A stretch of 59,426 bases of DNA, the filler included, from Dugesia japonica (lineage: Eukaryota), in NCBI GenBank assembly GCA_001938525.1. It is 4 parts of 4 records of this genome, joined end to end, with 100 filler letters (N's around TTAATTAATTAA, not from the genome) between each part and the next. Parts side by side here need not be neighbours in the genome. Positions count along the whole stretch, not along the records: positions 12,128 to 32,934 come from MQRL01608339.1; 3 more parts are not named here. The stretch is one strand, 5' to 3'. The position numbers were made by a program, and so were the translations under genes. The notes below the pieces were generated by a model. It saw only the letters and a list, made by a program, of their open reading frames with translations, was not told the origin of the DNA and made no database searches. Positions 12,128 to 32,934 of the stretch are shown in pieces; the first letter of the stretch is position 1, and each line of letters begins with the position of its first letter.

Positions 12128-12996
12128 CTAGAAGGTTTCATTTGTTTATTTCTTTTAAAATCTAGATTGTAGAAATATTTATCTATAATAGAAAATTCTG
12201 TGTGAGCAGAAAATATTTTATAAACACTCTTATTAAAATTAAAAGGCAAATAATTATCAATGAAATATTTTATATTTTTATCTTCAAGTGTTTCTTTATA
12301 ATTTTCATATAAATCATTAATTCTTTTAAGATGTAATTTATGAAGTTTAGGTNNNNNNNNNNNNNNNNNNNNNNNNNNNNNNNNNNNNNNNNNNNNNNNN
12401 NNNNNNNNNNNNNNNNNNNNNNNNNNNNNNNNNNNNNNNNNNNNNNNNNNNNNNNNNNNNNNNNNNNNNNNNNNNNNNNNNNNNNNNNNNNNNNNNNNNN
12501 NNNNNNNNNNNNNNNNNNNNNNNNNNNNNNNNNNNNNNNNNNNNNNNNNNNNNNNNNNNNNAATTAAATCACTTCTTTTAAATGGAAACACTTCTAATCT
12601 TAATCTTTCAATTTCATTAAAGATATTAATATATTTTGTTTGTGAACATTTATTTGTTAGATTTTTAATTTTATCATTTATAGCTTTATTTTTAAAATTT
12701 TTAGCTTTATATTCTAAATAAACTTTATTAATTTCAGTCTGATCAACTTTTAATATTTTAGAGAATATTAATTCATGTTTTTGTATTTTATCTTCAAGAG
12801 ACTTTATATAATTTAAATTAACTGCATCAAGTAATTCTATAGGATCTTCTATGATTTTNNAACATTGAATCATATCACCTGTTTCATTCACAAATTTATT
12901 TTCATTTGTTGCATCTAAAGTTCTAATTTTAGCATCAACAGTTTTTAATATTAAACTTGAATCTGTATTATTAGGAGTAGCACCAAACTTATTCAT
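12128..12996 (-). CDS. Putative fibre/stalk-like virion protein (3' truncated)
   Basis: IIEDPIELLDAVNLNYI matches the P....DA.N..Y stalk motif of phage/Polinton fibre-type proteins and is followed by a coiled coil. Its ATG overlaps the adenain stop (ATGA). Homolog at 27050-27440. Confidence 0.5.
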
Positions 12997-13415
12997 CCTC
13001 TATTTTCTATATCTAATTTATCATATAAATCTTTCATTTCAGATATTATCATGTCAAAATCAGTATTTTTGTGCACTTTGTATAAAAAATAAATACAAAG
13101 GATTCCACATATTTTAGTTTCAAAATGTTGCACTTGAATTTTATTATATTTCTTGACTCTAACGAGTCCTTTTACAGGTTTTAAACCAAAAGAATCAAAG
13201 TAGACTCCATTCTTATAGGCTGTCCAATGTGTTCCATTTTGATTTGAATTATTATAGTTGAAAATGTAACAAGTAGATGTTAAATGTTTGGGGATCTCAT
13301 TTTTCATATAAATCTCAAGGGGTAGATCTAAAAAGTTAGCAATTGAATATAAATCAAAATTTGTTGTTGTGTTGATTCCAAATGTTTTTAAAAAATCTAA
13401 TAAGTTATAAGTGAT
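12993..13415 (-). CDS. Adenain-like (C5) cysteine maturation protease
   Basis: GTHW, YFDSFG, Q and CG motifs give a full His-Asp-Gln-Cys set. The frame extends to 13415 (ATC where copy 2 has ATG: TYNLLDFLKTFGINT vs MSYGILDFLKTFGINT). Confidence 0.9.
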   Translation of the reverse strand: MTYNLLDFLKTFGINTTTNFDLYSIANFLDLPLEIYMKNEIPKHLTSTCYIFNYNNSNQNGTHWTAYKNGVYFDSFGLKPVKGLVRVKKYNKIQVQHFETKICGILCIYFLYKVHKNTDFDMIISEMKDLYDKLDIENRG

Positions 13416-13451
13416 TTTTAAATATTAAATTTCTGCACTACATTTTATTTA

Positions 13452-14096
13452 TTATAATCGATACTTTCGTAAGTGAGCTAAAATTGTAATTGTTTCATTG
13501 TTAAAATCTATAGTGTTAAAATTTTCATCTATGATATTAAATTTAAAACCGTCAATGTAATCTGTATTAATTTTAGAATAAATAGCCGGAGATGGTCTTT
13601 CAACTATTTTATATCCAAATGGCACGGTGTTTATTGGAAATGAATATAAAAGATTAATATTTCTTGTGTCCTTGTTGTTGGTGACATAATTACCTTTTAC
13701 AATATTGCATGTTATATTTATCGCGTTAATATTTATAATGTTAATTTTTTCATCTGAATAATATTTTCCAGGTTTAAATCCGAGTATTGTGTGAAAAAAT
13801 GATTTGTTATCAAATGAAAGTGTGGTTTTCACTTTGAGGTTACATTTTGATGTTGCTGTGTCTGGTTAAATTTCTAGATATTTTTCTAAACGTGTTGACA
13901 TTTCTTTTACTTCATAAGATCCAGGTTCTAGCTTCGTATCATTGAATTTATTATTTAAAGTGGTGATATTAAAAATAATATTGTAACATGAAAAATATAA
14001 CAATCCAAGTTCATATTCTGAATCCAATTTTATAGGATAATCTAAATTTATTTTTAGATTATCTTCAGTTCCAACTATTAAAAATTGATGTGACAT
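13452..14096 (-). pseudogene. Penton / minor capsid protein (single jelly roll), one in-frame TAA at 13866-13868
   Basis: Motifs PIKLDSEYELGL, LEPGSYE, LGF, ITCNIV, LLYSF, GYKIVERP and IIDEN..IDF...ILAHLR. The two track ORFs are in the same frame (YLEI*PDTATSKC). Confidence 0.85.
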
Positions 14097-14145
14097 TATT
14101 GTGCACTTTCTTCCTTTATGGTTTTTTGTTTGGCTTCGCTATTTA

Positions 14146-15085
14146 TTATTTAAAATATTTAAATTTATATTTTTTATATATCTTGTTAGATAATAAACCT
14201 TGAGATTTTAAATTTTTACATGTAGATTTAATTTCAGAAGATAAATTGTTATGTCCAGATTTTACAGCTGAAATTAATAATGTTAACTTTTCAAATAATG
14301 CAATTGGATTCTTGGGTTTATGGGTTGAGATTCCACGTGCTTTTTTAATTTTTAACTTTGTGGTTGGTGGTTCTAAACTTCTTGGTTTTCTGGTTTTTGG
14401 TGGGTTTATTATTGCTTGTAAAAATCTAATATAATCATTATTAGTTGATCTATTTTTTACTATTTCATTTAAATATAGTATAATAGAATTTTTCATTTCT
14501 TCAGAATTATCATTTTTTATTTTTTCTTTATTTCCACAAATTATATCTATAATTTTATCTGAATATTCACGAATTTTACCATTGACTGAAAAATGTGGTT
14601 TATTATTAATGTTAAAGAAAAATATCATCACATTACTTTCTGGATATAATAATCTTAAAAATTTCTTATTAGTTTCGAATTCTGCATTAGTAATTAAAGG
14701 TTTTATTTTTCCTTTTATTAAATTAGTATTAATTTCCATTTCTGGGAAAAATATTGTTGTATTTTCTTCTGATAATAATTCGGCAAGTGCACCATCTTTC
14801 AAAGTTAGTTCTAATTTATATTTATTTTTATTATAAGTTTTATATTTTATATCATCCTGGTTTTTGTTGCCCTCGTCTTCCTTTATGGGTTTGCCCTCGT
14901 GTTGCCCTTGTGTTGCCCTTGTGGTTGTCTTCCGTTATAGCTTCAATTGCAGAGATGGTTGGTTGTTGTAAAATTGATAAGTTGTTTTGTAAATTTTGAT
15001 AATCAAGAACTTTAGCGGAAAAAAAGTTATTATAATTTTCTTGTGCTTTAATTAATGCTTTTAATTCTTTAATTCTTTCCTCCAT
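14146..15085 (-). pseudogene. Conserved Maverick-type protein (coiled-coil N-terminus, P..L.E.L.LL.S...G.N...EI C-terminus), frameshifted in an 11-bp tandem repeat
   Basis: C-terminal NPIALFEKLTLLISAVKSGHNNLSSEIK, homologous to ~29040-29120. The frame of the 218-aa ORF stays open upstream into the CACAAGGGCAA repeat in the 77-aa ORF. Confidence 0.65.
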
Positions 15086-15143
15086 TTTATATAGATTTTT
15101 TTTCGCCCTTGTGGTTTTTTATGCACTTCGTTTGTTGCTGCGC

Positions 15144-15845
15144 TTAATATTCATCTTCGTCTTCATCTTCAGTTTCAGTTTCAGTTTCATCAGTTTCAGT
15201 TTCAGTTTCAGTTTCAGTTTCAGTTTCATCTTCAATTTCACCACCTTGTTTCGTGTTATATGGATTTAAATATATTCCCTGGCCTTTGTGTATTATTTTA
15301 AGTCCCTTTTTAAACTTTTTTGTTAAACCTTTAAATTTAGGATCAATATTTTTTAAATATTTATGTATTGCTGTGCCTTGATATGGATTTAAATAAATTC
15401 CAGATCCAGTATTTAATGTTTGTGCACTTTGTTTGTTGCCCCCTTCTGCCTTTATGGCCTCGTGGTTTTTGGCTTCGCTTGTTTGTGTTGTTGTTGGATT
15501 TAATTGTTCATTTAATTGCGCACTTCGTTTGGCTTCGCTTTCTTTCTGTAAATCAAGTAATTCACCTTGTTTTGTTTTATTAATAGCTTCTCTAGAATTT
15601 GTAACTGTACTTGCAATTTTAGATGCAACAGTAGCACCTCCTGCTAGCGCAGCTATTATTGCTGGTATTGCAGCTAAAAATGCAAATCCGCCTTCTTTTG
15701 AATTTGATTTGCGAGATTTGAGTTCATCTTTAACTTTTTTAGAANTATAATAATTTTTACCATTTATCTTTACAGATTTACATTTTTTAGAATTTACAAT
15801 TTTAATTAATTCTTCTTCACTCAGATTACTCTCATCATTCGTCAT
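15144..15845 (-). CDS. Adenovirus pX-like core / membrane-active precursor protein
   Basis: KEGG|FAFLAAIPAIIAALAGGATVA resembles adenoviral pX (GGFLPALIPIIAAAIG). Two GxGIYLNPY repeats and an acidic (ET)n tail. Confidence 0.7.
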   Translation of the reverse strand: MTNDESNLSEEELIKIVNSKKCKSVKINGKNYYXSKKVKDELKSRKSNSKEGGFAFLAAIPAIIAALAGGATVASKIASTVTNSREAINKTKQGELLDLQKESEAKRSAQLNEQLNPTTTQTSEAKNHEAIKAEGGNKQSAQTLNTGSGIYLNPYQGTAIHKYLKNIDPKFKGLTKKFKKGLKIIHKGQGIYLNPYNTKQGGEIEDETETETETETETDETETETEDEDEDEY

Positions 15846-15866
15846 TTTCTATATTTACAATTTAAA

Positions 15867-18800
15867 CTAACGAGGGAAACAAGTGCATATTAGGGTGTTA
15901 TTTATTTTATCTAATCTTAAATGCCAAGTGTTACACAAAGAACAGAGATATTGATTTCCATGTGGCCATGTTCTAGTTGCATTGTCTTCTATGATTCTTT
16001 TATCATCATATGCCATTAATGCTATTTTCTTTTGAGAAACTAATTTTATTTCATGTTTATCAGATTTTAATGAATAATTTGTTCCATAAAATACTTTATT
16101 TTTATCTTTTAATACTTCATCAAAATCAGACATTAATAATTTATTATTTTTCTTAAGACCTTTATTTCTAGAATCGAAAGCAATATCTCCTGTGCGGATC
16201 GCTGTATAAGAATAACTATAACTTTTTGCTTTTATAAAATTACCTTGAATTATTTCACAATCAGGTTTTTCATCTTTCATTTGAAATAAATTATCTCCAA
16301 GTAAACTTTCTAATTTAATAAGATTATCTCTGTGTTTTATTTCTATAAAGACACAATCAGTATTGAATAATGAATTTTATAGTTATCTTGACCTATCAAC
16401 GGTTGCATTTGATTGTATACAAAATCATACATAACTTCTTTTGCGTGTTCGAGGATTGTGAATCCTATATATGGAAATTTATCATATTTTAATTTAGCTT
16501 TTATCATATTAATTGCCGCAACATGAGCTTCATTTGTATCATTTAAACAGAAGATTTTAGATGATTTAAAAGTTGGTTTTCTTATAAATTTTCGATAATC
16601 TTTGTCGTTGTCAACTATTTCTATATTACATCGATTTCTAATATTCTCTAGAGTTTTTCCATAGAAAGCATTTAACATTAATTTATAAATGTAATCTCCG
16701 AATACATCTATGTTTCTTTTGGCTTCTTTTCTTAGGGTTATTAATCTATGAACATGTTCTTTAAACCATGGAGATGTTTTCATTTGAATTTTCTTGTGAA
16801 TTTTTATTAGTTTCATTCCATGTTTTAAATATAGATCTAAAGTTGAACCTAGAACTGTATAATTCTTTTTATCGAATTGATTTAATGTAAGTTTAATGTT
16901 ATCTTTTGATATTTTCTTGTTAAAACTTAATTGGTAGTTGCTTAACATCTCTTGCGTGATATTTAATCTTTCAGGTGCTAATGGGAAATATTTAGTTTTA
17001 TCATGGATCTCAGGTGGATAATCTAGATCAACTTCATATATAAAATTCATTTTATCTGTTGCTGGTTCATAATCCAATTCCGAGCACTCAAGGAATTCAC
17101 CTGTTGGAAGTGGTCTTGTCATGTACGATGCATAAAGTGAATTTTCATCAATATATTTTATAAATGTTTCTTGGTTCCAATCTACTGGTGGAGTTTTATT
17201 TTTAATCAATGAAAATATTATATCTCCAACTTGAGCTTTATTTAATCGTCTGTTATTTGATATTTTATTATTTGAAAAGACTTGACGTTCACCTAGGACA
17301 CCTGAATAGCCGCCACGGATTCCAGATTCTATTGTCAAGAAAATATCATAAGTTTCAGGTTTTGCATATTTTAAATAAACATTTGCATTTAACATTCCAG
17401 TTTCCCATGAATATCCTGGTGCAGAATAAGAATAACATGGATCTAATCTAAGAATATTATTTAAACATGAGGTTCTAAAGTTTTCTAAGAAATCAGTAAG
17501 AATTAAAACATCTAATTTCATATAATGTAACATGTATTCCCATAGGTTATTATAATCTAAATAATCTATTAAAAATTTATCATAATCTTNNNNNNNNNNN
17601 NNNNNNNNNNNNNNNNNNNNNNNNNNNNNNNNNNNNNNNNNNNNNNNNNNNNNNNNNNNNNNNNNNNNNNNNNNNNNNNNNNNNNNNNNNNNNNNNNNNN
17701 NNNNNNNNNATATGGAAATATTGCTTTTTTAGGTTTTAAATTAAAAGATTTTAATATTGGATAATTATTGGAAGATGTTAATAAATTACCCATTACTTCT
17801 ATTGTTGTAAATGGAAGTAATCTAGCTGAATCTAAGAATCTAATATCTTCATATTGAAATGAAATATAATTATCAGAAGAATGTGGNNNNNNNNNNNNNN
17901 NNNNNNNNNNAAATTTTGTTATTAATTCTCTGAAAAATAAATGGTTATCATAGCCGGATGCGTTATGAAAATAAAATGGTATAAATAAATTCTTGACACT
18001 TTGATCATTTAAATTACATTTGTTACATGAATATCCTCGGGGTTCTCCTGTGAAATGGTTATGATCTAAAACTGGTTCTTTTGTGATTTTTTTGTTACAA
18101 TAATAACAATTTTGATTTTCGAATGCTGGATATGTTCCTGTGTATTTTTCTATTAATTTATTTTCTTTTATATCTTGTAATTTATTATTAGTTTCTTCTA
18201 AAAAGTTAAAGAAATCTGTATAAATATTTTCGCCTGAAAATTCATAATATTTTGATTCTAAGAGATCTTGGTGTTCACTGTGAAGATAAATTCCTAAAGA
18301 TATTGCTTTTTGTTTTTTAGTGTTAATATCTGTGTATGCTTCAAAATCNNNNNNNNNNNNNNNNNNNNNNNNNNNNNNNNNNNNNNNNNNNNNNNNNNNN
18401 NNNNNNNNNNNNNNNNNNNNNNNNNNNNNNNNNNNNNNNNNNNNNNNNNNNNNNTCTTGATGTTTAATTAATATTTCTTCAGATGAGTAAGAATTCATAC
18501 ATCGTATGCATGGAAAAATTTTATTTCCATTATTGGAAAAGAATACACCTAGGTCTCGACATAGAATATAATGATTTTTATATATCAAGAGATTACATTT
18601 ATTTTCTTCTGTTTTAGGTTTTGATATGTGATGTGAAATATGTAAAGGCTCGAGTTTTTTGTTAACATTTACACCGAAAACATTTATTTGAAGATTATTT
18701 AATTTCTCAAATTTAGGAATATCAATTATTTTCATTGGTAATATTTCATCACATTTTAATTCTGATAAATGTGGAATGTAATTATTTACACGTGTTGGAT

Positions 18801-19668
18801 TATCAAGTGGATATCTATGAGCTAGGATTGAATATAAGAAGCATTTGTCATCTGTGTTTTCTATATTTATTACACCTGGTTTTGAAAATGGTAATTTAAT
18901 AAAAGTTAATCCATTTTTCGAATTATATTTATAAAGTTCTAATGTATAATTTAAAATATGTAAAAATGTCCAACCTGATCCTTCACGATCTTCATCTTCA
19001 ATATATCTTTCTAATTCTTGAAATGATTCATGTACAACATTATTAATATCCTTTAAAACTGTTATTGTATTATTTTTAGAATAAGAATAAAGTTCCCGCT
19101 CAGAATATTCATTATTAATTTCTTTTAAATATTTGCCAATTACTACAATTCCATAAATAACTACTTCATTTGTACATTTAAAATATTTAGTAATAATTTC
19201 TTTCACATCATTTTTAAATGCATTAATATTTCTAATGGGAAATGAATATAATTTTTCCACATCATATTTCATTACTACTCTAGTTTTACTAAAATATTCA
19301 ATATCATAATCAGTATATGGTTTTAAAATATCTCTAATTTCTTCATCTTTTTTAATAGCTTCTGCGTGAGCTTTTTTTTCATTTTCTTTTTTAATTATCA
19401 TTTTTTTATGACTTGGAGAATTATAACGTGTTCTTGCATGATTTTGTTTTTTAAAAGTTTTATTGCATATTTCACAGAATAATGGGACAATTTCATTTCC
19501 ACATTTTGTTGCATTTAAATGTGATTGTAAATCATTTTCAGTTTTAAATGTTCTGTTACATTTTTTACATTTAAATTTATCTGTTGGTTTATAACAAATT
19601 TTAGATCTAATATGTGCTTTTAAACCCGCTATATTTTTAAATGTTTTATTACAATTTTCGCACAGCAT
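15867..19668 (-). CDS. polB: Protein-primed family B DNA polymerase with three N-terminal zinc fingers, vOTU-like domain and EndoVII-type insertion; one frameshift at ~16368
   Basis: Motifs EGSGW, INIENTDDKCF...NHY, DFEAY, CYYC..DHNHFTGEPRGYSCNKCN, FHNASGYD, RFLDS, Y.KLDV, GIRGG, YIDENSLYA, KLMLNAFYGK, (frameshift) NTDC, MKDE, KSYS, DDKR. The break at 17569 is an N-gap frame artefact: the post-gap frame DYDKFLIDYLDYNNLWEYMLHY is continuous with ORF 16343-17533. Confidence 0.95.
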
Positions 19669-19768
19669 TTTTATAGAGTAAAAATTTAATCATAGATATT
19701 AAAAAAGAGGATATTTTTTTATTTAAGAGGATTTATTTTATATTTTAATTGCGCAATATAAAACTGAC

Positions 19769-19872
19769 AATTTATTATATAACAATTTTCATGCGATATT
19801 TTTCACGCGAAAATTTATTATATAACAATTTTCATGCGATATTTTTCACGCGAAAAATGTCACGTGACATTT
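19769..19872. repeat. Two perfect 43-bp tandem repeats followed by an 18-bp perfect palindrome
   Basis: AATTTATTATATAACAATTTTCATGCGATATTTTTCACGCGAA at 19769-19811 and 19812-19854, then AAATGTCACGTGACATTT at 19855-19872. Confidence 0.9.
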
Positions 19873-21750
19873 GGTACAGTAAGTATACCCCCTGAGTTTA
19901 AAAAGTATATTTCCTATTACTTATATATAATCAACTACCGTATGAGAAAATGATCTATTATAATACTAATAAATGCAATTTATCTTAATTCAATTTATTT
20001 TTACGTTTTTTGTATAATTGCGACTGTCCTATTTACTTTTTGTAATAATAATCAATTATATTTTACTGATAATAATAATTTCTGTTTTACTAATTATTAT
20101 TTTACCAAATAGTTATTTATTTATTCTTCAATTATACTTTTTAACTAATACTAATCATAATATATATGTAATTTTCGTATTTTCTCAATTTTAATATTTT
20201 TCCTATACATAGCTTTATTACAGATATTTTGAATTCTTCTATATAAGATATAGCGTACGATCTGTTAATATAGATAACTTTTTTTAATCTATAGATAATT
20301 ATATAAAACGTCCCTTTATCTTTTTTTTATTCAATGGAATTTTCTTTTATTTGGTTCCATTTTCGTTACAGTTATATTTGTTGCCGAATTATTTCTAATT
20401 TTTTATATCATTTTCCGTATTAATTTCGTTTAAATTTATTAATTAATTANTTTTATTATTTTGGTCTTTATTCTCTTCTTTAATTTAATTCAATTATTTT
20501 TCTTTTCTCATTGATATCAACTGACTCTTTCAATTTCATTTTTCGTTTAATTTTCCCGGGGCCTTTATTTTTTTAAATCGTCTTTAATTTATTTTGATTT
20601 AATTCTTTTGGTCAATTTATTCTTTTAATTTTTTAAAATTTATCTTAATGACTATTTTAAAATTTGTATTATTCTCGCAAAATATTTTTTTCACCTCTTT
20701 TTCGTTATTTTGCTTGTTCAAGATAATTTAATTCAATAGAAAGATAAATAAGTACTAAAAAATGAAAACTTTATAAAGTAGCAAAGAATCACGAAATAAA
20801 TAAATGAAACCTTGGTAGGTTTCATAGAAAGTACTCGAACAATAGGGCTAGATCATGCCACTCAATCTATAGAAACGAATATTTAGGTCGCTTCGACAAC
20901 AATAAATTCTAATTAATTAGAAGTGTATAATAATAAAGTGTTACTATGATATATGATTTCATTCTGATTCAAATACACTCAAACAGTTAAAAGATTTATC
21001 CATTTTCCTGTTAAATTTCTAAAAATTGTTAACGAAAATTAACAGTGACATTTAATAAGATAAATCATTAGTCTTAAATATAATCATTAGATTTTTACGC
21101 GCAAGTTATTATATTTAGTGACATTCTTAAACTACTTATTAATAATTTAAAAGATAACGAATTCAAAATCAAGTGCAATGTAAGTCGAACTGGTTTTTAT
21201 ACTGATACTATTGATAAAATATAGGTAATGTTTATATTGGATACCACATTTTAAATTAATTTTGTCATTTCAATAATATGTTAAACGTTTTAAAATTATT
21301 TTACAATTTTATTAAAAGTTAAATTAAAATATAATTAATTATAATAAAAAATTATAGCTACAAAAAATATTGACTTATTTTAATTTTTTTAATGATTTTT
21401 ATTTAAATTTACATTAAATTATAATTAATGTCATATTTATTATAATTATAATATTAAAGTATTTAGTTGTATTGTTACCCACTTTTCATTGAAAAATTAA
21501 ATTAATACTAATATTAAATAATTGTAACAAATTAAAATTATTTAATTACATAGCTAGAAATATAAAATGAAATACTTTTAATAATTGGTGATTAAAACTG
21601 TAGTAAATAACAATAATTTATGTTATAAATATATTAAATTATTTATACAATATAACATTAAAACTTTAGCTTCTCATATTCTTATTCTATATAAATTTTG
21701 TGTGTTACGCGGTATTTTTAAAAATTTGACCTTGTTACATTAACAAAAAT

Positions 21751-22727
21751 ATGAGTGATGTTATTACTGTTCCTATTATTTATGGATTGGAGTTTCAAGT
21801 TAGATTAACTATATGAAAACAGTACTTAAATCTTATGTAGTCTCGGAGTTTGATAGGTCTATATAGCGAAAAAGATGAAATTCGATTTGCCGCTGGAACT
21901 CAGTCTATTAAGTCCATGAACCAGCTCCATTTGATTACATATAATGATGAAATTCATGCAATAACAGCAAATATTTTTAATCATTCTGATGGTGAAATAT
22001 GGGGACTAACTGCAATGGCTTCAAATCCAGAGATTTTAATCACAACATTTTCATCACGTTAATATTTCATACACTTAATTTTAATTAATTTTAGTTTTTA
22101 GTGCACAATAATTATTCCGAAATAAAAATGTTAGCAAATCTTTGGAAATTGCCATTAACTGACAATACTCATTTAAATGCTAATTTAGAATTTTTAACTC
22201 AGCTTCCAACTGTTGAAATTGGCGATGTAAAACAGTAAAAATGATAATGCTGGATTTTTAATTATGAAATTTTATTTAGAATTATAAGTTGTCCAAATGA
22301 GGAAACAAAAAATCTCATTGCATTAGTTGATGGGAATTTCGTTTTAATGGGATGTAAAGGATCAGAATTTAGTATTATTTCTAAAGGTCGCTTAGATAGT
22401 CGTGGGCACTGCAAATTTAATGTTGGTAGTTGGAGTCCACATCATGGTACTAAGCAAGTAGTTACTGCTTCTGAAACAAATATATATGGTTGGGATATAA
22501 ATTCAATGAAGTATGAGTTTTTAGCAAATAAGTTAGAAGATTTTAAATTTCTTAGAATGTCGTACAATATTGAAAATTCTCATTCCCATATGGTACGAGA
22601 TATAGATTATAATCCGAATCGCCAATATTGTATCATTTCTAGTGGTGATGATTGCTTTATAAAAATTTGGGATCTAAGAAACACAAAACCAGGACCAGTT
22701 AAAGAAATAGATGAGCATACTCATTGG
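21751..22727 (+). CDS. EIPR1: EIPR1/TSSC1 WD40 protein, exons 21751-21798, 21841-22057, 22102-22234, 22280-22510, 22556-22727; 3' part not found
   Basis: Spliced translation PIIYGLEFQ|SRSL...IRFAAGTQS...GEIW...WSPHH...VRDIDYNPNRQY..SSGDDC.IKIWDLRN...EHTHW matches metazoan EIPR1. GT-AG introns are 42, 44, 45 and 45 nt. Confidence 0.93.
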
Positions 22728-23209
22728 GTAATATAATTATATGGTATAATTTAACGTGCTATTTTTGTAGCGTTTTAAAATACTCTAATAAATCATAAAA
22801 TTACCATTTGAGTCATATAAATTTTACTCTTGAACAAAATAAATGTCATTTTTTGAAATAAATATTCGGTGTTACACCTTTATGCTCGATAAACAAAACA
22901 ATATATTGAGTCATCAGCTTTAAGTTTAATCTAAAATATTAAAGAATTAAAAAATATTAAACTGCCCAGATCTGCTAGAATTCTTACATAATTCTGATGA
23001 TATTACACTAAATCGGTTGAAATAGAATTTAGTTGAAATAAAATTGTAAAAGTTGCGAAAAGAAAATAAAAATATAAATTTAAAATTCCAAAAGCTCAAA
23101 ATAAATTAAAACATCAAATTGCAAAATTTAAGTGTATATCATACTGTATTAGATCACTAAGTTTTCATAAGGAGAACATGTGTATTAACCCTATAATGAT
23201 ATTCGTATT

Positions 23210-24020
23210 TAATCTTTTGAAGAGCCAAAGTGTGTGAAGAAACTGTGTAGTTTTCTCGACATATGCAACTGCTATTGTCAGTTTATTAAAGATTATGCGA
23301 TAAAAGTTAGGAAACTGGAACAGTTGTGGAGTGGTCAGGGGAACACAAAATTAGTCGGAAATTTTTGAAGGTTTGAAAACAGCACTGACTACGGCACCAA
23401 TGTTGACGTTCCCAGATTTACGGAGAGAATTCATCTTGGACACGGATGCAAATTTTAGCATGGTTGACATCAAAAGACGAATACGGGTAAAGAAGAGTTA
23501 GCGTATGGTTCACATGCGATGTCTAATCATAAGAAGGGTTATGATAACCGGTTATGTATAACCAGTAAGAAATTGCTAGCAGTTCATTATTTTTGCTTGC
23601 ATTTTAAGCATTACCTCTATTGGAAACGTTTCACGCTGAAAACGGATCACAAAGCAATTACTTTTATGTTAAGTACAAAGAAATCGATTATCAGCCAGTT
23701 TCAAACTTGGATTAATTTGTTAAGCAGCCTGGACATCCAGCTGGAATATTGGAAAAGTACTCTTCGTGGAATGCGAATAAACTCAGCAGATTGGATTGAT
23801 AGCGATGGTCAGACAGAATGAACCAAAAATTCGAGAAATTATATTAACAGAATGGATATTAAAGTTTGGATGCCCTAGAGAAGTTAGATTGAATTGCGCA
23901 ACAGGATGTTCGAAGCTCGGGAGATGAAAGATTTCGCATAAAGGTTCCAGATTGTTTGGCATTTGGCGAGTCCTTAACATCACAAAAGTAATGAGCAGGT
24001 TGAACAACAGTTCTGGACGG
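23210..24020 (+). pseudogene. Ty3/Gypsy pol fragment (RT connection and RNase H)
   Basis: LKTALTTAPMLTFPDLRREFILDTDANF, KKLLAVHYFCLHFKHYL, TDHKAITFML, SQFQTWINLLSSLDI; homologous to 3813-4280. Confidence 0.88.
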
Positions 24021-24278: not shown

Positions 24279-24345
24279 TGGGTTGATGGTTTGATTTTTT
24301 AGATTTAGATTTTAAAAATATAATTATTTTTTAATTAATAATAAA

Positions 24346-24735
24346 ATGGCTATTAATATTATCATGGAAAGTGACTTTTATAAACTCTTAAAAATTTATA
24401 ATTTTATAGAAAATTCTGTTACAAGTTTTTGTAAAAATAATGTAAATGATAAAATAGTAATAAAATATTTAAGAGAATTTAATATTCCTTATAATAGAAA
24501 AAAATATATTAAATTTTCAGAAAGAGATGTTACTGGACAATATAAATCTTTAATAAAACGATTTGATAAAAATCAAATACAAAATCCTAAGAGTGAGCAA
24601 AGACAAAACCAACAAATACAAAAACCTAAAATAGATTATCGTAAAATGAGTGATTCATATTTTTTAAAAGTTGTCGAAAATACTGTTCGTAAAAAAATTA
24701 TAAAATTTTATTTTTTCAGTAAAGAAAATGGCTAG
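24346..24735 (+). CDS. Small basic, possibly HTH-like protein of the Polinton-like element (homolog at 32400-32711, -)
   Basis: FYKLLKIYNFIENSVTSFCKNNVNDKIVIKYLREFNIPYNRK versus FYKLLKSYNFMENSVLSFSKQNNVNEKTVINYLREFNISYNRR. Confidence 0.6.
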   Translation: MAINIIMESDFYKLLKIYNFIENSVTSFCKNNVNDKIVIKYLREFNIPYNRKKYIKFSERDVTGQYKSLIKRFDKNQIQNPKSEQRQNQQIQKPKIDYRKMSDSYFLKVVENTVRKKIIKFYFFSKENG

Positions 24736-25427
24736 TAAAAAACCAGTTGCGCTTAAACCAAAACCGCAAGAAGTTTTGAGTATAAATACTTTATATAAAA
24801 ATTTACTATCACGGAAATTGAAAGTTTTGCCAAATGTGAAATTACAAATAAAACAGCAAAAAAATATTTAACTCTTTTAAAGTATATGTATTTAGAAGTT
24901 GAAAATTTTAATGATAGTGAAACGTTTAAAATATTATTAAGTATTATGGTTTCTAAATTTTNNNNNNNNNNNNNNNNNNNNNNNNNNNNNNNNNNNNNNN
25001 NNNNNNNNNNNNAAGAAATATTGAAATTATAAAACAATTTGAAATTAATTACCAAAAAGAAAGGGATGAAAATAATAAATTAATTTATTAAATAATAAAT
25101 TAAATTTATCTCAAAAACCAAAATTTATTGAACATCCAGGTTTAAAACTTACATTGATAAAATGGGAAGAAGATGATCTAATTATTACAAATGAAGATTG
25201 TATAAATATTGCTAAAAAAATACAAGAAAATAGTGATGATTAATGTGAAAGATTAACAAGATTAAAAGTTCAGGAAGAATATGAAGGAGATATAAAAAGA
25301 GTTTACGCAGCTTAAAGCGATTTACCAAATTACACAGTAAAAACTTCAAACCCCAACTGGCCCCACTCTAAATAAGAACCTTTAAGGTAGTTAATTTTTT
25401 AATACAACCAAATTTTTTATCTATAAA

Positions 25428-27052
25428 ATGAATATCTCAAATATAAATTTTCAAACACCTATGAGTTCTTCGGCGTTAATTTTTAAATGTTCTGTTTGTA
25501 ACAAGACTTTTAAAAATAACGCGGGGTTGTCGTCATATATTCAATCACAAACATGTACAAGATCGAGAAACAAGTTTTATGAATGTAACATTTGTTTCAA
25601 AAGATTAGCAAGTGAAAAAAGCTTGCGATTGCATAAAAACTCTACAATTTGCGGTAATAGCGGCATGGGACCCTCTGGGATGTCTTGGTTTGGATTTTCA
25701 TGTAATATTTGCAACTTAAACTTTACTAGACAAAATCATGCAAAATCTCATTTTAATAGTGGAGTACACCAAGAGCGTGTTTTAAAATTGAGAGAAGAAG
25801 GAACTAAAAAATTATTTGATGAATTACTTGAAGATGAAGCAATTGATTTTGAAAATAATGAAACTCGAAAATTATTTAAACATTTAAAAAATATAAAGTA
25901 TTNTAAAATTGAATATTTTAAAGAAAGTAAAATTGAATTAACTAGAAATGTACAAAAATTAAATTTTAAATTAATAACTTGGTTTAAAAAAGAAATTAGT
26001 AAAATTGTTTATTTATATTTTGATTATTCAAAAAAGTTGATGTTACGTTTAATTGTAAATTGTAATTACACTAAAGAAGATGAAGAAAGAGTATTTAATT
26101 CATATTCAAGTAATGAAAGAATTACTATCAAAAGCGATGTAAAAATTATCGTGGAAGAGTTATTAAATTAACTTAAAAGATACATGGAAGATGAAGTTCA
26201 AAATGAAAGTGGATGGAATTTGGATTGTATTGTTGATTTTAAAATTGAACTTTCAAAATATCAATCAATAGTTGGAGCTGGGTCGGGGGTTCACTATGGG
26301 CCATATAAAAAATTACATTTTATTAAACCAGGTGTAATTAATATTAAAAATAGAGAAGATTAATGTTTTCTATATTCAATTTTAGCTGATAAACATTTAT
26401 TTGAAAATCAACCAACTAGAGTTTCAAAATATATTCCTTATTTAAATGAATTAAAAATAAACGGAATGAATTTTCCTGCAAGTATTGATGATGTAAAATT
26501 ATTTGAAAAATTAAATGATTTTAAAGTAAATATTTTTCAAGTAACCAATTCAGCTAAAATCTATCCAGTTTATATTTCTCATTATGATAGTATTTCCTAA
26601 ACCAGATGAAAATAAATGTAATTTATTATTTTACAAAAGTCATTAAATTTTTTTAAAGAAATGCTGGTGTTTTTGCAAATACTAATAAAAATCATTTGTG
26701 TTTATGTTGTATGAATTATTATCACAGTAAAAATTTATTAATTAATCATCAAAAAGAATGTATTAACCACTATTCATCTAAAGTATATTTTGAAAATGAT
26801 AAATTTTATTCATTTAAAAATAATTTTTTCTCAATTGCCTTTTGTAATTTATGGTGATTTTGAAAGTTGGACCAGTACATTTACCAATAAACAAAAACCA
26901 TTATCTCTAGGAATTTATATCAAAAGTAAATATCAACATTTAATTCAAAATGAATATAAAGAATTTTATGGAGAAAATATTCTTAATCAATTCTTTGAAT
27001 TTTTAGAAGAAATAAATAATAAATTAATTGATATAAAAGAAAATAAATTGCT
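25428..27052 (+). pseudogene. polB: 5' half of ZnF-pPolB, copy 3 (decayed, truncated in the exonuclease domain)
   Basis: Three zinc fingers (CSVCNKTFKN..., CNICFKRL..., CNICNLNF...H), ESGW, PGVINIKN, YGDFES, NKLIDIKENKL; multiple stops. Confidence 0.88.
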
Positions 27053-29160
27053 CTCTTATTTTATTTATCTCTTGTTTAACTTGTGTATTTTTAAAATCAG
27101 TTTTCAAAGAATTAAAAGATTCACTCATCGTTTGTGTTAGCTCATTTAATTTATTTATTTTAATAATTAAATNNNNNNNNNNNNNNNNNNNNNNNNNNNN
27201 NNNNNNNNNNNNNNNNNNNNNNNNNNNNNNNNNNNNNNTCAATTGATTTTTAACATCACTCATCGTTTGTGTTAGCTCATAAACTTGTTTTTTTAATTTA
27301 CTGAAATATTTTAAATTAATAGCATCTAGTTCATTTTTAGGTTCATTAATAATTTTCAAACAAGTAATTGAATTTCCACTTCCATTAACAAACCTTTTAT
27401 CATTGTTTGCAGATTCTAATTTAATTTAGCTAAAACATGTTTTAATACTTGTGTATTATTTTGACTATTCAAAGTTTCTCAAAATTTATTCTAATAATTT
27501 TATTCTTCTAATTTATTATACTAAAATAATACTAAAGGTATCATATAATTCATCAATAATTTCGTCAAAACTCTTGAATAAAAGTGAATATAAAAAATAT
27601 AAACATAATACTCCACAAATTACTTTCCAATTAAACTCCAATTAAACTCNNNNNNNNNNNNNNNNNNNNNNNNNNNNNNNNNNNNNNNNNNNNNNNNNNA
27701 AACATGTTTTAATACTTGTGTATTATTTTGACTATTCAAAGTTTCTCAAAATTTATTCTAATAATTTTATTCTTCTAATTTATTATACTAAAATAATACT
27801 AAAGGTATCATATAATTCATCAATAATTTCGTCAAAACTCTTGAATNNNNNNNNNNNNNNNNNNNNNNNNNNNNNNNNNNNNNNNNNNNNNNNNNNNNNN
27901 NNNNNNNNNNNNNNNNNAATTAAACTCCAAAAGGTTGAACTCGAATTTTATTATATACTTTTACATGTTTTTAAATTTCTTGAAAAGGTTTTAAACCATA
28001 AAAATCAAAATAAAAACCACGATAAAAAGCAACCCAATGTGTTCATTTTTGATTTGAATTTTGATAATTAATAATTTTGGGCTCATGGATGAGTTCGCTT
28101 TGCTCGCGACTGAAAGGAGGCCACTTTTTATCTTTCAAAATTTCAGTCGAGACTTCATTTTTTATAAGCTTCGCGACTTCATCTTTCAATAAAACTTCAA
28201 TCCCAAAGGGTCCTATTTCAAGATTTAAAAAATCTGCAATAGAATACAAATCAAAATTAGTTCTAGTATTTATTCCAAATGTTTTTAGAAAATCTAGAAT
28301 TCCGTAAGACATTTTCATGTATGAACTAATAAAGAAATAGTTGCACGATCAAAATCTATTGTATTATTATTTTCATCTATAATATTAAATATTAAAGAAT
28401 TGATACATTTGGAATTTAATCTTGAATAAATAGGAGTTGAAGGTCTTTCTATAATTTTAAAACCAAAACCAACAGTATTTACTGGAAAAGAATATAAATT
28501 CATTGGAGAACTATTGATATAACTAAATTACAATTTATATTTATCATATTAATGTTTAAAATTTCAACTTTTTTTTCAGAATATTTTTTTTGAGTATTCT
28601 TTAGGTGAAAAACCTAAAATCGTATGAAAAAAGATTTTTTTAATAAATTTTATTGTATGTTTTGTATCTAAAGTACATTTCGTTGTTGAAAGATCTGGGA
28701 AAATTTAAATTCCATGTTCTTTTAATTTACTAGAGAGTTCTTTAATTTCATAAGCACCCGGTTCTATCGTTATTAATTTATCATTCCAGTAGAAAGTATT
28801 ATTTTTATTAGTAACATTGAAAATTATAATATAGCAACAAAAACTTAATAAAGCCATTTCATAGTGGGGCCATTTTGGGTCTGAATCTAATTCTATTGGA
28901 AATCTTAAATCAACTTTTAAATCAGACTCTTTACCAACAACTAAAAATTGATGAGACATTTTATTTATATAAAATATTTATTTTTATAAACATTATATTT
29001 TTCTCTAGTAATTAATTTTTGGTTTAATAATTCTTTACAAACAGATTTAATTTCTTTATGTAAATTATTATGACCTGCTTTTACAGCTGAAATTAATAAT
29101 GTTAATCTTTCAAATAAAGATAATCTGAATTTAAAATTAATTCTAAACCTTTACCTTTAC
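27050..29160 (-). pseudogene. Decayed morphogenesis module of copy 2: Maverick-protein C-terminus (~29160-28990), penton (28959-28315), adenain (28318-~27720), fibre-like (~27440-27050)
   Basis: Same order and clear homology to copy 1: LTLLISAVKAGHNN; MSHQFLVVG...IEPGAYE...LYSFPVNTV; NQK*THWVAF..YFDFYGLKP; IINEPKNELDAINLKYF. Confidence 0.88.
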
Positions 29161-29257
29161 TTTGAATGGGCCCCTTTGGAATTTCTTTTTTAGGAATGGG
29201 ACCTTTCCATAAAATACATTATTTAGTAATTTGAAAAAGTAATCTGAAAACACATCG

Positions 29258-31120
29258 TTATTTCTTTTTGATATATTTTTCAATATAATTAAATTCAATA
29301 TAATCTTTTAACCAAGTTTTTGTTAACATTACATATTTACTATGAATTGTTTTTATTTTCATTCCTAAAGATTTATAAAAATCTAATGTACTTCCTAGAA
29401 TAATATAATTTTGTTTATCAAAGTGATTTAGAGTTAATTTAATATTTTTCTTGGTTAATTTCTTGTTAAATGATAATTGATAAGGAGCTAACATTTCATT
29501 TGTTATGTTTATTCGATCTGGTGCTAAAAGAAAGTATTTTGTTCTTTTATGTATTTCTGGTGGATATTCTAAATCCACTTCATAAATATATTTAATTTCA
29601 TTTTTTGCTGGAGTATAATTTAAGTCTTCGCATTCAAAGATTTCTTCTGTAGGCAAAGGTTTAGTCATACAAGAAGCATATAATGAATTTTCATCTAAAT
29701 ATTTAAAATATGTTATGAGCATAATCTCTAAAGTTTCCATTAAAGTGATCATGATCAATAACTAGATTTTCAGTTATATTTTTATTACAATATCTACATT
29801 TTTGATTTATAAATTGTGAATGGTTTGCTCCTCTATAATATTCAATTAATTTATTTTCTTTTATATCAATTAATTTATTATTAATTTCTTCTAAAAATTC
29901 AATAATTTGTTCATGAATGTTTTCTTCATAAAATACTTTATATTCATTTTGAATTAAATGTTGATATTTACTTTTGATGTAAATTCCAAGAGATAATAAT
30001 TTTTGGTTATTTGTAATTGTACTTGTCCAACTTTCAAAATCTTCATAAATTACAAAAGTTAATTCATTTGTGAAATGATTATTTGTAAATGAAAAATATT
30101 TTTAAGTTTCAAAAAAAACATTTGAAGAATCATGATTTATACATTCTTTTTGATGGTTTATTAATAAAGTTTTACTTCTATATGAATTTCTACAACATAA
30201 ACACAAATGATTTTTATTAGTAATTGTAAAAAAAATATAGCAAACAATATTTATCATCTTTATCTTCATTTTTAATATTAATTACAACTTGTTTAACAAA
30301 GGGTAATTTTTTATATGAGGAGCCAACCAATGATTGATATATAGAAAGTTCAATTTTTAAATCAACAATATGATCTATATTCCATCCAAATTCATTTTGA
30401 TCTTCATCTTGAAGTTGATTTAATCATTTACAATTATTTTTACAGCACTCTTTACAAATTCTTTCATTACTTGAATATGAATTAAATATTCTTTTTTCAT
30501 CTTCTTTAGTGTAATTACAATTTACACTTAATCATAACATAATCTTTTTCGAATAATCAAAATATATATCAACAATTTTAGAAATTTCTTTTTTAAACCA
30601 AGTTATTAATTTAAAATTTAATCGTTGAAAATTCCTGGTTAATTCAATTATACTTTAAAATATTCGATTTTGTAATATTTTATATTCCTTAAATGTTTAA
30701 ACAATTTTCTTGTTTCATTCTTTTTAAAATCAATTGCCCCTTCACCAGGTAGTTCATCAAATAATTTTTTAGCTTTTTCTTTTACTTTTAATACTTTTTC
30801 TTTGTGCTAATCACTGTTGAAATGTGATTTTGCATGATTTTCTCCTGTAAATGTTAAATTACAACAATTACATGTTAAACCAACTCTACTCATATCACTT
30901 CCAACACTTCCACAATTTGTGGAGTTTTTTGTAATCGCAAGCCTTTTTCACTTGCTAATCTTTTGAAACATAAGTTACATTCATAAAACATGTTTCTCGA
31001 TCTCGTACATGTTTGAGATTGAATATTTGACGACAACCCCGCGTTATTTTTAAAAGTCTTGTTACAAATAGAACATTTAAAAATTAACTCTAAACCACTC
31101 ATAGGTCTTTGAAAATTCAT
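29258..31120 (-). pseudogene. polB: ZnF-pPolB copy 2 (decayed, internally deleted)
   Basis: FKCSICNKTFKNNAGLSS zinc finger at 31120; YLDENSLYA, YEVDLEYPPEIH and LAPDRINIT at 29258-29758; inverted homology to 25450-27050. Confidence 0.88.
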
Positions 31121-31935
31121 TTCATTTGAGATACTTATTTTATAAAGAACAAATTTAGGTTGGACAAAAAAACTACCTTAAGGTTATTATTTATGTAAAT
31201 TTTGGTTTATGTTTGGTTTATATTTATTTTATGTTAGTCTATATTTTATCGTACTTTTTGGGATTGATGTTTAATGTTTTGTTTAAATCATTATCTATTT
31301 CACTGTCTAAATATCCACCACCACTTTCGTTTATTTTTCTTGATTTTTTGTTTATTGATTTATTTATAGTTGTATTTGTGTTACTTTTTAATTTTGATAA
31401 TGCTAATTTATTTCTTATTATTATCTGTTAAACTTTTTTTTGTGGAATTTCTAGAATTTCAAAAGAATTTGTTTTAATATTAAAAACATAATCACCATAA
31501 TAATTTTTAATATATTGTTGAGACTTTTCATTAAAAGAATATTTTACTCTTGGATATCTTTTTCTCATGTTTTAAATTTAATTCTCTTTAAGTTTTATTC
31601 AACATTTGAACAGGTATCCCCATTTCTTTGGCTATAATTGAATCTTTTAAATTTGGCTCTTTAAAAATAAGTTCTTAATATTTTGCAGCTATACAAATCT
31701 TTTGAGATTTATTTAACAACTTTGAATCAAAAGTATTTGTGCAACTAATATAGTCACCAACATTTTCACACAAATCTTTTTGGTTTTCTGTAGCCAATTT
31801 TCTTTATTGATAAAATAAATTATAAAAATTAAATTAATTATACAAATAATAATTAATAAAAATATAATTGTGAAACATAATTACATTCATTTGATGTTCA
31901 CATTTTTTATTTAGATTATCAACATTTTTTATAAA

Positions 31936-32397
31936 CTATTTATTTCTTTTATTTCTACTGTCATTTTCTAGAGTAATTTTATTTAAGTAATTGTTTTGTT
32001 TTGTTATTTGATTTTTAATAGCATTTAATATTTTACTATTTTTATTATTATATTCTTCTATTTTCTTTACAGCGACTAATCTATTTATTTTTGCTTCATC
32101 ATATTCAGCGGCTTTTTCTAATTCATCTTTCAAAGATTCTTTTTCAATAACTAAATCATAAATTGTATTACCTGGTATAATTACAGCTTTTTCAAATAAT
32201 TTAAATTTCGGGTAAACTTCTTTTAAAATTAAATTTTGTTCCTTTGGTGTAGATTTTATAACTTGAATATAGTCTTGTTTTAGATTATATATAAATTTTG
32301 AATCTTTTTTGATTTCTCTTCCATTTGATTTCTCTTCCATAAACTCTTCCATTTTTTTAATTAATAAAATAAAAAAATTCTCTTTGTTTGCGTCCAC
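31936..32397 (-). CDS. Hypothetical Lys/Glu-rich protein upstream of polB copy 2
   Basis: 153-aa open frame co-oriented with and packed among the element genes. No recognisable motif. Confidence 0.4.
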   Translation of the reverse strand: MDANKENFFILLIKKMEEFMEEKSNGREIKKDSKFIYNLKQDYIQVIKSTPKEQNLILKEVYPKFKLFEKAVIIPGNTIYDLVIEKESLKDELEKAAEYDEAKINRLVAVKKIEEYNNKNSKILNAIKNQITKQNNYLNKITLENDSRNKRNK

Positions 32398-32399
32398 TC

Positions 32400-32711: not shown

Positions 32712-32934
32712 TTTTCTTTAGTAATAAAATAAAAGTTATTTTTTAAAATGTTGATTATTCATACAATAAAATTTTTAATATTATTTTTAAGAATGGGGCC
32801 TTTTGGGATTTCTTTAATTTATTCTTTTGAATAAACAACACCCGGAGGTTTAAATTTATATATGTTGGGTTTTTAGGATTTTGGATATAGGATTGTAATA
32901 TCTTTCTCTTTTTGTCTGGTTGTTTCCATCGCTT

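What the first reader, a model, noticed from the sequence alone, without database searches (positions are those of the whole stretch)
12128..19872. Near-intact, compact, single-orientation adintovirus/Polinton-like endogenous virus lineage
Seen: the order polB, pX-like, conserved Maverick protein, penton, adenain, fibre-like runs on one strand with short or overlapping spacers, and the same order recurs at 31120-27050. Only about four lesions are visible (two frameshifts, one stop, one lost ATG), which suggests recent endogenisation. Neither copy shows a major capsid protein, retroviral integrase or ATPase, and in copy 1 polB is the first gene. Established: canonical Polintons carry an rve integrase and a double-jelly-roll MCP. 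Inference: an undescribed, streamlined and possibly integrase-less MELD-type virus family with at least three copies here. The missing genes could simply lie past the truncation.
Basis: partly seen in the sequence, partly recalled or inferred. Interest (0 to 1): 0.85.

Follow-up and report, generated by a model that had tools for sequence, protein, structure and literature searches.

The report
Broken Maverick-type endogenous virus fragments
This stretch of a very AT-rich eukaryotic genome holds one fairly well preserved but cut-off piece and two badly decayed pieces of a Maverick/Polinton-type integrated DNA virus; the genes said to be missing cannot be judged, because every copy ends before the place where they would lie.

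Summary
The core observation is real. On the minus strand, 19668 to 12128, lie a protein-primed family B polymerase, an intact 233-aa gene, one or two unknown basic ORFs, a penton, an adenain-type protease and a fibre-like gene. They are tightly packed. Polymerase, penton and protease are each confirmed by tools.

The rest of the finding is overstated.
- Copy 1 is cut by the piece's edge inside the fibre-like gene.
- The "second copy" (32749 to about 27050) keeps only polymerase, penton, protease and fibre remnants. It carries two large deletions and many stops and frame changes.
- A third fragment (24309-27062) is only an upstream gene plus the polymerase N-part, inverted against copy 3.
- Copies 2 and 3 have genes upstream of the polymerase, so "polB first" holds for copy 1 only.
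- Copy 1 and copies 2/3 are separate lineages (synonymous sites saturated, dN/dS about 0.2-0.3).

No integrase, ATPase or major capsid gene is in the piece, but no copy reaches where they would be. A penton and a maturation protease imply a capsid. Verdict: a divergent new member of the Polinton/Maverick kind. The integrase-less, streamlined family is unsupported. Interest is modest.

The parts
15867..19668 (-). [quoted passage not shown] It has three C2H2 zinc fingers at the N-terminus and an Endonuclease VII/HNH-like motif in the middle. Broken: one frame change outside gaps, plus one change of phase that coincides with the assembly gap 17590-17709. Three gaps lie inside it.
   Evidence: PF03175 E 1.6e-17, zinc fingers E 3e-12, PF02945 E 5e-7. 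569 relatives, best 47% identity. Aligns to residues 77-1143 of the 1150-aa relative P0271. Gap tests.
15144..15845 (-). It has a Gly/Ala-rich hydrophobic segment near residue 56, a 7-residue motif present twice, and an acidic tail encoded by a hexanucleotide tandem repeat. Function not established.
   Evidence: ORF. Hydropathy maximum 2.07. Tandem repeat 15150-15240. No Pfam (including no adenovirus pX family), PDB or meaningful PHROGs hit. Absent from copy 3.
14146..15085 (-). It is either two genes or one gene with one frame change. Net charge of the larger ORF is +19.
   Evidence: No Pfam, PDB or PHROGs hit. Only its last ~50 codons have a counterpart in copy 3, at 63% identity.
13452..14096 (-). 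Copy 1 penton (single jelly-roll vertex protein), about 215 codons, broken by one in-frame stop.
   Evidence: 615 representative clusters at E<=1e-3. Both pieces map collinearly on the intact relative P0121 at 49-50% identity. AF2 model of P0121 has pLDDT 87.9. Foldseek PDB: mavirus penton E 2.4e-9, then PBCV-1, adenovirus and Sputnik pentons. BFVD: PLV, giant-virus, adomavirus LO5 and MELD-virus pentons.
12993..13424 (-). Copy 1 adenain-type (clan CE, Ulp1-like) cysteine protease. The frame is open for 143 codons but has no ATG at its head. His, Asp, Gln and Cys are invariant in the family.
   Evidence: Relatives at 42-50% identity. Invariant H66, W67, D77, Q99, C106, G107. Profile against PDB gives adenovirus protease at E 8.5e-5. 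AF2 pLDDT 86.2. Foldseek top hits are adenain, 1nln and 1avp, TM 0.57-0.59.
12128..12996 (-). Copy 1 fibre-like gene. It starts in an ATGA overlap with the adenain stop, contains the gap 12353-12561, and is cut off by the piece's edge.
   Evidence: Flanks are open in one phase only, 0 stops against 4-34 in the other frames. The last 74 codons show a heptad-like pattern, 0 of 200 shuffles reaching it. 40% identity to the copy 3 remnant, dN/dS 0.85. No family hit.
19669..19900 (.). Region just upstream of the copy 1 polymerase. It holds a perfect 43-bp unit repeated twice (19769-19856), carrying a short motif four times, followed by a CACGTG-centred palindrome. It may be a regulatory region. No ORF follows up to the host gene.
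   Evidence: 6 motif matches against 0.64 expected.
24309..27062 (+). Copy 2 fragment: a 129-aa upstream ORF (24346-24735) and the N-terminal part of the polymerase (25428-27062). The polymerase part has at least 2 frame changes and at least 2 stops and ends inside the gene. The fragment is an inverted partner of the outer 2.7 kb of copy 3.
   Evidence: arms 82-91% complementary; zinc fingers.
27050..32749 (-). Copy 3 fragment. It holds an upstream small-gene homologue (32431-32749), a 153-aa ORF (31936-32397), a polymerase remnant (29143-31120), the tail of the unknown ORF (28971-29123), a penton remnant (28315-28959), an adenain remnant (27540-28321) and a fibre-like remnant (27050-27494). 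Lower-bound counts: polymerase has at least 4 frame changes, at least 2 stops and two large internal deletions; penton at least 4 stops; adenain at least 1 frame change and at least 2 stops; fibre at least 1 stop.
   Evidence: Three assembly gaps and a 147-bp exact duplicate lie in its distal part.
21751..22736 (+). Neighbour: host gene for an EIPR1-type WD40 beta-propeller protein, with introns of about 40-60 nt. It faces away from the copy 1 polymerase.
   Evidence: PF23609 E 4e-8 and 1.5e-15 on two exon ORFs. First exon. GC3 0.19-0.21, like the element's genes.
23234..23830 (+). Neighbour: fragment of an LTR-retrotransposon pol gene (RT-RNase H part). It is richer in G+C than everything around it.
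   Evidence: PF17917 E 8e-11. PF17919 E 6e-5. GC3 0.40. GC profile.

Best explanation
The piece is a transposon-rich stretch of a very AT-rich eukaryotic chromosome. It carries three fragments of integrated Maverick/Polinton-type viruses (class Polintoviricetes; adintovirus-like if the host is an animal).

Copy 1 is the left 7.5 kb of a young provirus and holds two gene groups.
- Replication: a protein-primed family B polymerase. By the published architecture this carries its own terminal-protein and OTU-protease domains; here it is extended by three C2H2 fingers.
- Part of the virion module: a small hydrophobic/acidic protein, a basic protein, the vertex penton, the adenain-type maturation protease and a fibre-like protein.

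The scaffold ends inside the fibre-like gene. The major capsid protein, the packaging ATPase and the integrase most likely lay further on and are simply not in view.

Copies 2 and 3 belong to a second lineage that diverged from copy 1 while both were still under selection as viruses. They are old and decayed, and they lie tail to tail as an inverted pair.

Shown: the identities of polymerase, penton and protease; integration next to a host gene; truncation of every copy; divergence and decay. Inferred: the functions of the unverified ORFs, the missing genes lying beyond the edge, and the mode of replication and integration.
For: - Polymerase.
- Penton.
- Protease.
- Truncations: copy 1's fibre-like ORF runs off the piece. 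Copy 3's fibre remnant meets copy 2's polymerase at about 27050-27062, and copy 2 matches only the first polymerase ORF.
- Upstream genes in copies 2 and 3. They fit the published note that accessory genes typically sit upstream of PolB in adintoviruses (PMC8502044).
- Two lineages: copy 1 against copy 3 gives dS 1.1-1.3 and dN/dS 0.16-0.32 for polymerase, penton and protease. Copy 2 against copy 3 gives dS 0.27 and dN/dS about 0.5.
- Host context: EIPR1 exons with introns lie 2.1 kb from the polymerase start. Silent-site GC is the same in the element and the host gene.
- Published gene sets: polintons carry pPolB, RVE integrase, Ulp1-type protease, packaging ATPase, MCP and mCP (PMC11161782). 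Nearly all adintovirus contigs over 10 kb have rve and FtsK (PMC8502044).
Against: - No integrase, ATPase or major capsid gene is seen anywhere in 20.8 kb.
- No terminal inverted repeat or target-site duplication was found.
- Copy 1 shows no gene in the 2.1 kb upstream of the polymerase, unlike copies 2 and 3.
- Three of the six gene labels are unverified.
- The host was not identified.
- The assembly is gap-ridden and holds at least one probable artefact (a 147-bp exact duplicate around a gap), so junctions may be unreliable.
Confidence: 0.8

Rival explanations
1. One reading: a distinct, streamlined lineage that really begins with the polymerase and really lacks the rve integrase, the packaging ATPase and the double jelly-roll capsid protein.
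For: None of these genes is in the piece. Copy 1 has no ORF upstream of the polymerase. The proteins are small (protease 143 codons, penton about 215) and distant from anything named: best polymerase hit 47%, named animal hits about 35%.
Against: All three copies are cut before the relevant region. Copies 2 and 3 do have genes upstream of the polymerase. A penton and a maturation protease without a major capsid protein would have no known role. Small pentons of 230-260 aa and proteases of 138-173 aa are the norm in the large relative families. The element is integrated, which calls for an integration function.
Confidence: 0.07
2. Copies 2 and 3 are not two insertions. They are one old defective element whose lost right end was replaced by an inverted copy of its left 2.7 kb (upstream gene plus polymerase N-part). 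This gives very long inverted ends, as is known for defective genomes of protein-primed linear replicons.
For: The arms 24309-27049 and 29848-32749 are collinear inverted repeats, 79-91% identical, around a 2.8-kb unique core that continues copy 3. Divergence between the arms is moderate and only half constrained: dS 0.27, dN/dS about 0.5. In one search all six frames scored alike over parts of the arms.
Against: Arm homology starts only about 37 nt upstream of the small gene, and no matching flanks or target duplication are seen. A dN/dS of 0.5 is also compatible with two related viruses that inserted separately and then decayed. The inner junction lies 110 nt from an assembly gap in a region with an evident assembly duplicate.
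Confidence: 0.3
3. Part of the picture is an assembly artefact. The tail-to-tail junction, the internal deletions of copy 3 and some frame changes would then come from collapsed or mis-joined repeats in a short-read scaffold, not from the genome.
For: There are fourteen N runs in 20.8 kb. A 100% identical 147-bp block lies on both sides of the gap 27650-27699. One apparent polymerase frameshift in copy 1 sits exactly at a gap.
Against: The copies are 62-85% identical to one another, too different to be collapsed by an assembler. Stops and frame changes in copies 2 and 3 are spread through ungapped sequence.
Confidence: 0.15

Closest known systems
Polintons / Mavericks (class Polintoviricetes)
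   Same: Protein-primed family B polymerase of about 1200 residues with an Endonuclease VII-like insert, shared with relatives. Single jelly-roll penton. Ulp1/adenain-type protease. Integrated in a eukaryotic chromosome. Several decayed copies.
   Different: Integrase, packaging ATPase, major capsid protein and terminal inverted repeats are not in view. The polymerase has an N-terminal extension of three C2H2 zinc fingers that the full-length relative P0271 lacks. Sequence identity to anything retrieved is at most 47-55%.
Adintoviridae (proposed family, Starrett et al. 2021, PMC8502044)
   Same: PolB plus adenain plus penton, accessory genes upstream of PolB in copies 2 and 3, and a fibre-like coiled-coil gene. 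The nearest named polymerase hits are genomic proteins of animals: a brittle star, a spider and a sea anemone.
   Different: No pX-like domain could be shown in the 233-aa ORF. The penton model matches adintovirus entries in BFVD more weakly (E 9e-7 to 7e-5) than PLV, giant-virus and adomavirus pentons (E 5e-16 to 1e-11). Alpha or Beta class membership was not tested. The host is not known to be an animal.
Polinton-like viruses and virophages (e.g. Tetraselmis viridis virus S1, mavirus)
   Same: Best structural matches of the penton: TsV-S1 in BFVD at E 5e-16, and the mavirus penton crystal structure at E 2.4e-9. Same morphogenetic logic of penton plus cysteine protease.
   Different: Most PLVs lack pPolB and use other replication proteins (PMC11161782). 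Here a full exonuclease-bearing pPolB is present, with animal-genome relatives.
Adenoviridae
   Same: Penton base and adenain folds, and protein-primed polymerase.
   Different: The proteins here are far smaller (penton about 215 codons against 440-570 residues; protease 143 against 204). The element is integrated in a chromosome. Sequence identity is 8-22%.

Membership tests
Polinton/Maverick (Polintoviricetes) | [quoted passage not shown] | tested here: met
   PF03175 E 1.6e-17. 569 relatives. Collinear with residues 77-1143 of a 1150-aa relative. The TP and vOTU sub-domains described in PMC11161782 were not tested separately.
Polinton/Maverick (Polintoviricetes) | Retrovirus-like (rve) integrase | tested here: inconclusive
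   No rve hit in any scanned ORF of the piece, but every copy is truncated.
Polinton/Maverick (Polintoviricetes) | [quoted passage not shown] | tested here: inconclusive
   No capsid family hit, and no unassigned stretch long enough on the coding strand. Truncation as above.
Polinton/Maverick (Polintoviricetes) | Single jelly-roll minor capsid (penton) protein | tested here: met
Polinton/Maverick (Polintoviricetes) | Ulp1/adenain-type cysteine protease | tested here: met
   The Pfam C5 hit alone is below threshold (E 0.02-0.05).
Polinton/Maverick (Polintoviricetes) | FtsK/HerA-type packaging ATPase | tested here: inconclusive
   No hit in the piece. Truncation as above.
Polinton/Maverick (Polintoviricetes) | Terminal inverted repeats and short target-site duplication | not testable with these tools
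   At most one end of any copy lies in the piece. No terminal repeat was found, and no duplication at the outer ends of the inverted arms.
Adintoviridae (proposed) | PolB in the Alpha or Beta adintovirus cluster | not tested
   No named reference came back from the protein searches. The nearest named hits are uncharacterised animal genomic proteins at about 35%. Fetching references of animal viruses is barred.
Adintoviridae (proposed) | Adintovirus-class virion and accessory proteins (including a pX-like domain) | tested here: inconclusive
   Penton fold shared, but adintovirus entries are not the best matches. No adenovirus-pX family hit on the 233-aa ORF at E<=0.1.
Adintoviridae (proposed) | Animal host | not testable with these tools
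   The host was not identified. An exact look-up of a host exon ORF found nothing. There are only indirect hints: named relatives are from animals, and introns are about 40-60 nt.
Polinton-like viruses (PLV) | Replication by proteins other than pPolB, and no rve integrase | tested here: not met
   A complete pPolB is present in all three copies.

The most novel reading that the evidence does not exclude
The lineage of copy 1 may be a real variant of the Polinton plan. In it a zinc-finger-extended polymerase would be the terminal gene and the virion genes would follow directly on the same strand. The integrase, and perhaps the ATPase, would be absent or replaced, so integration would depend on another function.
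Probability: 0.07. Interest if true: 0.6.

Novelty: new member of a known kind. Interest (0 to 1): 0.3.

Why it matters
It adds a divergent Maverick/Polinton lineage from an extremely AT-rich genome: at most 47-55% identity to anything retrieved, with silent-site GC of 0.07-0.21 matching the host. One copy is young enough to keep most frames open. It also shows a C2H2-finger extension on the polymerase.

It does not bear on whether integrase-less polintons with penton and protease exist, because no copy reaches the decisive region. The practical lesson concerns the scan. Gene absence next to a scaffold edge and assembly gaps should not be read as gene loss, and a frameshift at an N run should not be counted.

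Tried and rejected
- A word-indexed protein search with the C-terminal penton piece found nothing. This was a length-filter effect; the full HMMER search then found 615 clusters.
- Single-sequence PDB searches of the protease, penton, 233-aa and 218-aa ORFs gave nothing. Only the protease family profile worked.
- PHROGs gave no useful hit for the fibre-like, 233-aa, 218-aa, 77-aa and upstream ORFs.
- An exact look-up of a host exon ORF, meant to name the host, found nothing. Cluster look-ups of the nearest relatives gave no organism names.
- tRNA and Rfam scans were empty.
- The nematode polinton paper (PMC10748475) has no mention of the terms I searched.
- My first heptad proxy was too strict and returned zeros. 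A relaxed version with shuffles supports a coiled-coil-like pattern only for the last 74 codons of the fibre-like gene.
- A variant genetic code was considered and rejected: long ORFs are open under the standard stops.
- Contamination by a free virus was considered and rejected: a host gene with introns lies on the same sequence and has the same silent-site composition.
Full report
LAYOUT. The piece (12128-32934) is about 22% G+C. All genes of the finding lie on the minus strand. Reading from 19668 down to 12128 there are:
- a polymerase gene (19668-15867);
- an intact 233-aa ORF (15845-15144);
- an unknown basic region (15085-14146);
- a penton gene (14096-13452);
- a protease frame (13424-12993);
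- a fibre-like ORF that starts in an ATGA overlap with the protease stop and runs off the piece.

Spacers are 21-58 nt.

GAPS FIRST, AS ASKED.
- At each of the four listed gaps the flanks are open in exactly one frame and full of stops in the other two.
- The nominal phase is kept across 12353-12561, 18349-18454 and 17887-17910.
- The 24-nt gap is spanned by single protein alignments of 18 relatives and of the full-length relative P0271.
- Across 18349-18454 the flanks are collinear on P0271 in the same frame, with 61 residues against 46 codons.
- Across 17590-17709 the spacing fits (48 residues against 48.7 codons), but the phase differs and open frames reach the gap edge on both sides. This frame change may be only an error in the estimated gap length and cannot be counted as a lesion.
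- No relatives were available for the fibre gap, so continuity there rests on the shared phase only.
- I did not look up or fill any N.

IDENTITIES.
- Polymerase. It hits PF03175 at E 1.6e-17. It also has three C2H2 fingers at the N-terminus and an Endonuclease VII-like motif. There are 569 relatives; the best is 47% identical, and named ones at about 35% come from a brittle star, a spider and a sea anemone. Copy 1 covers residues 77-1143 of the 1150-aa relative, so the gene is essentially full length. The published polinton polymerase plan is TP-vOTU-Exo-Palm (PMC11161782). I did not test the TP and OTU parts.
- Penton. A full HMMER search found 615 clusters. Both pieces of the window's gene map in order on the intact relative P0121. 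The model was made of P0121 with 94 relatives (pLDDT 87.9). It matches the mavirus penton crystal structure (E 2.4e-9) and the pentons of PBCV-1, adenoviruses and Sputnik. In BFVD it matches pentons of a PLV, giant viruses, adomaviruses (LO5) and a MELD virus ahead of adintovirus entries.
- Protease. The frame is open for 143 codons. Its 14 relatives show invariant His, Asp, Gln and Cys. The profile finds only adenovirus protease in the PDB (E about 9e-5), and the model's best folds are adenain.
- Not verified. The 233-aa ORF has no adenovirus-pX family hit. The basic ORFs have no hits. The fibre label rests on position, 40% identity between copies and a heptad-like last stretch.

- Copy 1, outside gaps: polymerase one frame change; penton one in-frame stop; protease no ATG; possibly one frame change in the unknown region.
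- One stop in 2238 readable codons corresponds to about 0.24% (0.01-1.3%) neutral change, so copy 1 is young.
- Copy 3, lower bounds: polymerase at least 4 frame changes, at least 2 stops and two large internal deletions (about 0.85 and 2.35 kb relative to copy 1); penton at least 4 stops; protease at least 1 frame change and at least 2 stops; fibre at least 1 stop.
- Copy 3 lacks the 233-aa gene, the smaller unknown ORF, most of the larger one and the polymerase C-terminal part.
- Copy 2 is only an upstream ORF and the polymerase N-part, with at least 2 frame changes and at least 2 stops.

RELATIONS OF THE COPIES.
- Copy 1 is 62-84% identical in DNA to copy 3, in patches.
- For that pair, synonymous sites are saturated (dS 1.1-1.3) and dN/dS is 0.16-0.32 for polymerase, penton and protease (each aligned block was counted on its own and only the counts were summed). 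These lineages therefore diverged as working viruses.
- Copies 2 and 3 are 79-91% identical inverted arms (24309-27049 and 29848-32749) around a 2.8-kb core, with dS 0.27 and dN/dS about 0.5.
- They are either one defective element with an inverted duplication of its left end or two related insertions. I could not decide between these.
- Arm homology begins about 37 nt before the small upstream gene, and no target duplication is seen.

MISSING GENES.
- No rve, ATPase or capsid family is found in any ORF scanned, and no unassigned coding-size stretch remains.
- Copy 1 stops at the piece's edge inside the fibre-like gene. Copy 3 stops inside the same gene, where it meets copy 2. Copy 2 stops inside the polymerase. 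Absence therefore cannot be tested here.
- Copies 2 and 3 carry a 129-aa and a 153-aa ORF upstream of the polymerase. This matches the published remark that accessory genes sit upstream of PolB and shows that the polymerase is not the first gene in that lineage.
- In copy 1 the 2.1 kb upstream has no ORF. It holds only a perfect 43-bp tandem pair and a palindrome before the host gene.

SURROUNDINGS.
- An EIPR1-type WD40 gene with short introns starts at 21751 on the plus strand.
- I searched its exon ORFs one by one by reference and left the joined model out.
- A fragment of an LTR-retrotransposon pol gene follows at 23234-23830.
- Silent-site GC of the element's genes (0.07-0.21) equals that of the host exons (0.19-0.21), while the retrotransposon fragment has 0.40.
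- The host could not be named.

VERDICT. This is a divergent new member of the Polinton/Maverick kind: one young truncated copy and two old fragments. The integrase-less, streamlined family is not supported by this piece.

WHAT I LEFT OUT. Fetching the DNA around the relatives' genes would show directly whether this lineage carries capsid, ATPase and integrase genes. I did not do it, because the relatives may be proviruses of animals and fetching such is barred by any road. It is listed under referred steps.

SLIPS, STATED AS REQUIRED; NOTHING WAS DELETED.
1. While weighing the 'pX-like' label I recalled from memory, in my reasoning only, a stretch of a known animal virus's core protein.
2. 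My early scripts printed raw lists of similarity blocks. Approximate break places could be inferred from both. Later scripts print only counts and outer bounds.

Noticed in passing
19668-19400 (copy 1), 25428-25780 (copy 2), 31120-30890 (copy 3): All three polymerase genes begin with C2H2 zinc fingers (jaz/zf-met type, E down to 3e-12). The full-length relative P0271 has the Endonuclease VII-like insert but no fingers. This may be a lineage-specific N-terminal fusion on a protein-primed polymerase.
   Followed up: partly
around 18000-18150 within the copy 1 polymerase: An Endonuclease VII/HNH-like zinc motif (PF02945, E 5e-7) lies inside the polymerase. It is shared with P0271 (E 3e-9) and with several relatives' precomputed domains. 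Its role is unknown.
   Followed up: partly
19769-19856: A perfect 43-bp unit is repeated twice just upstream of the copy 1 polymerase start. It carries an 11-nt motif four times (6 matches in the window against 0.64 expected) and is followed by a CACGTG-centred palindrome. It may be a promoter or regulator site.
   Followed up: partly
27433-27579 and 27700-27846: A 147-bp block is 100% identical on both sides of the assembly gap 27650-27699, so the protease/fibre boundary of copy 3 appears twice. This is most likely an assembly artefact.
   Followed up: no
24148-24278: A hairpin-like inverted repeat (31-nt arms, 97% complementary, 69-nt loop) lies directly outside the outer end of copy 2, between it and the retrotransposon fragment.
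   Followed up: no
21751-23830: The EIPR1-type host gene shows its first exons, but no exon for its last part was seen before the G+C-richer LTR-retrotransposon fragment begins. The gene may be disrupted, or the scaffold mis-joined.
   Followed up: no
15150-15240: The acidic tail of the 233-aa ORF is encoded by a hexanucleotide tandem repeat (12.7 copies). The same ORF contains a 7-residue motif twice and one site fitting the adenain cleavage pattern inside its hydrophobic segment.
   Followed up: partly
24309-27049 and 29848-32749: Copies 2 and 3 form a 2.7-kb inverted pair around a 2.8-kb core. The shape is what a defective linear replicon would have after its lost end was replaced by an inverted copy of the other end.
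   Followed up: partly
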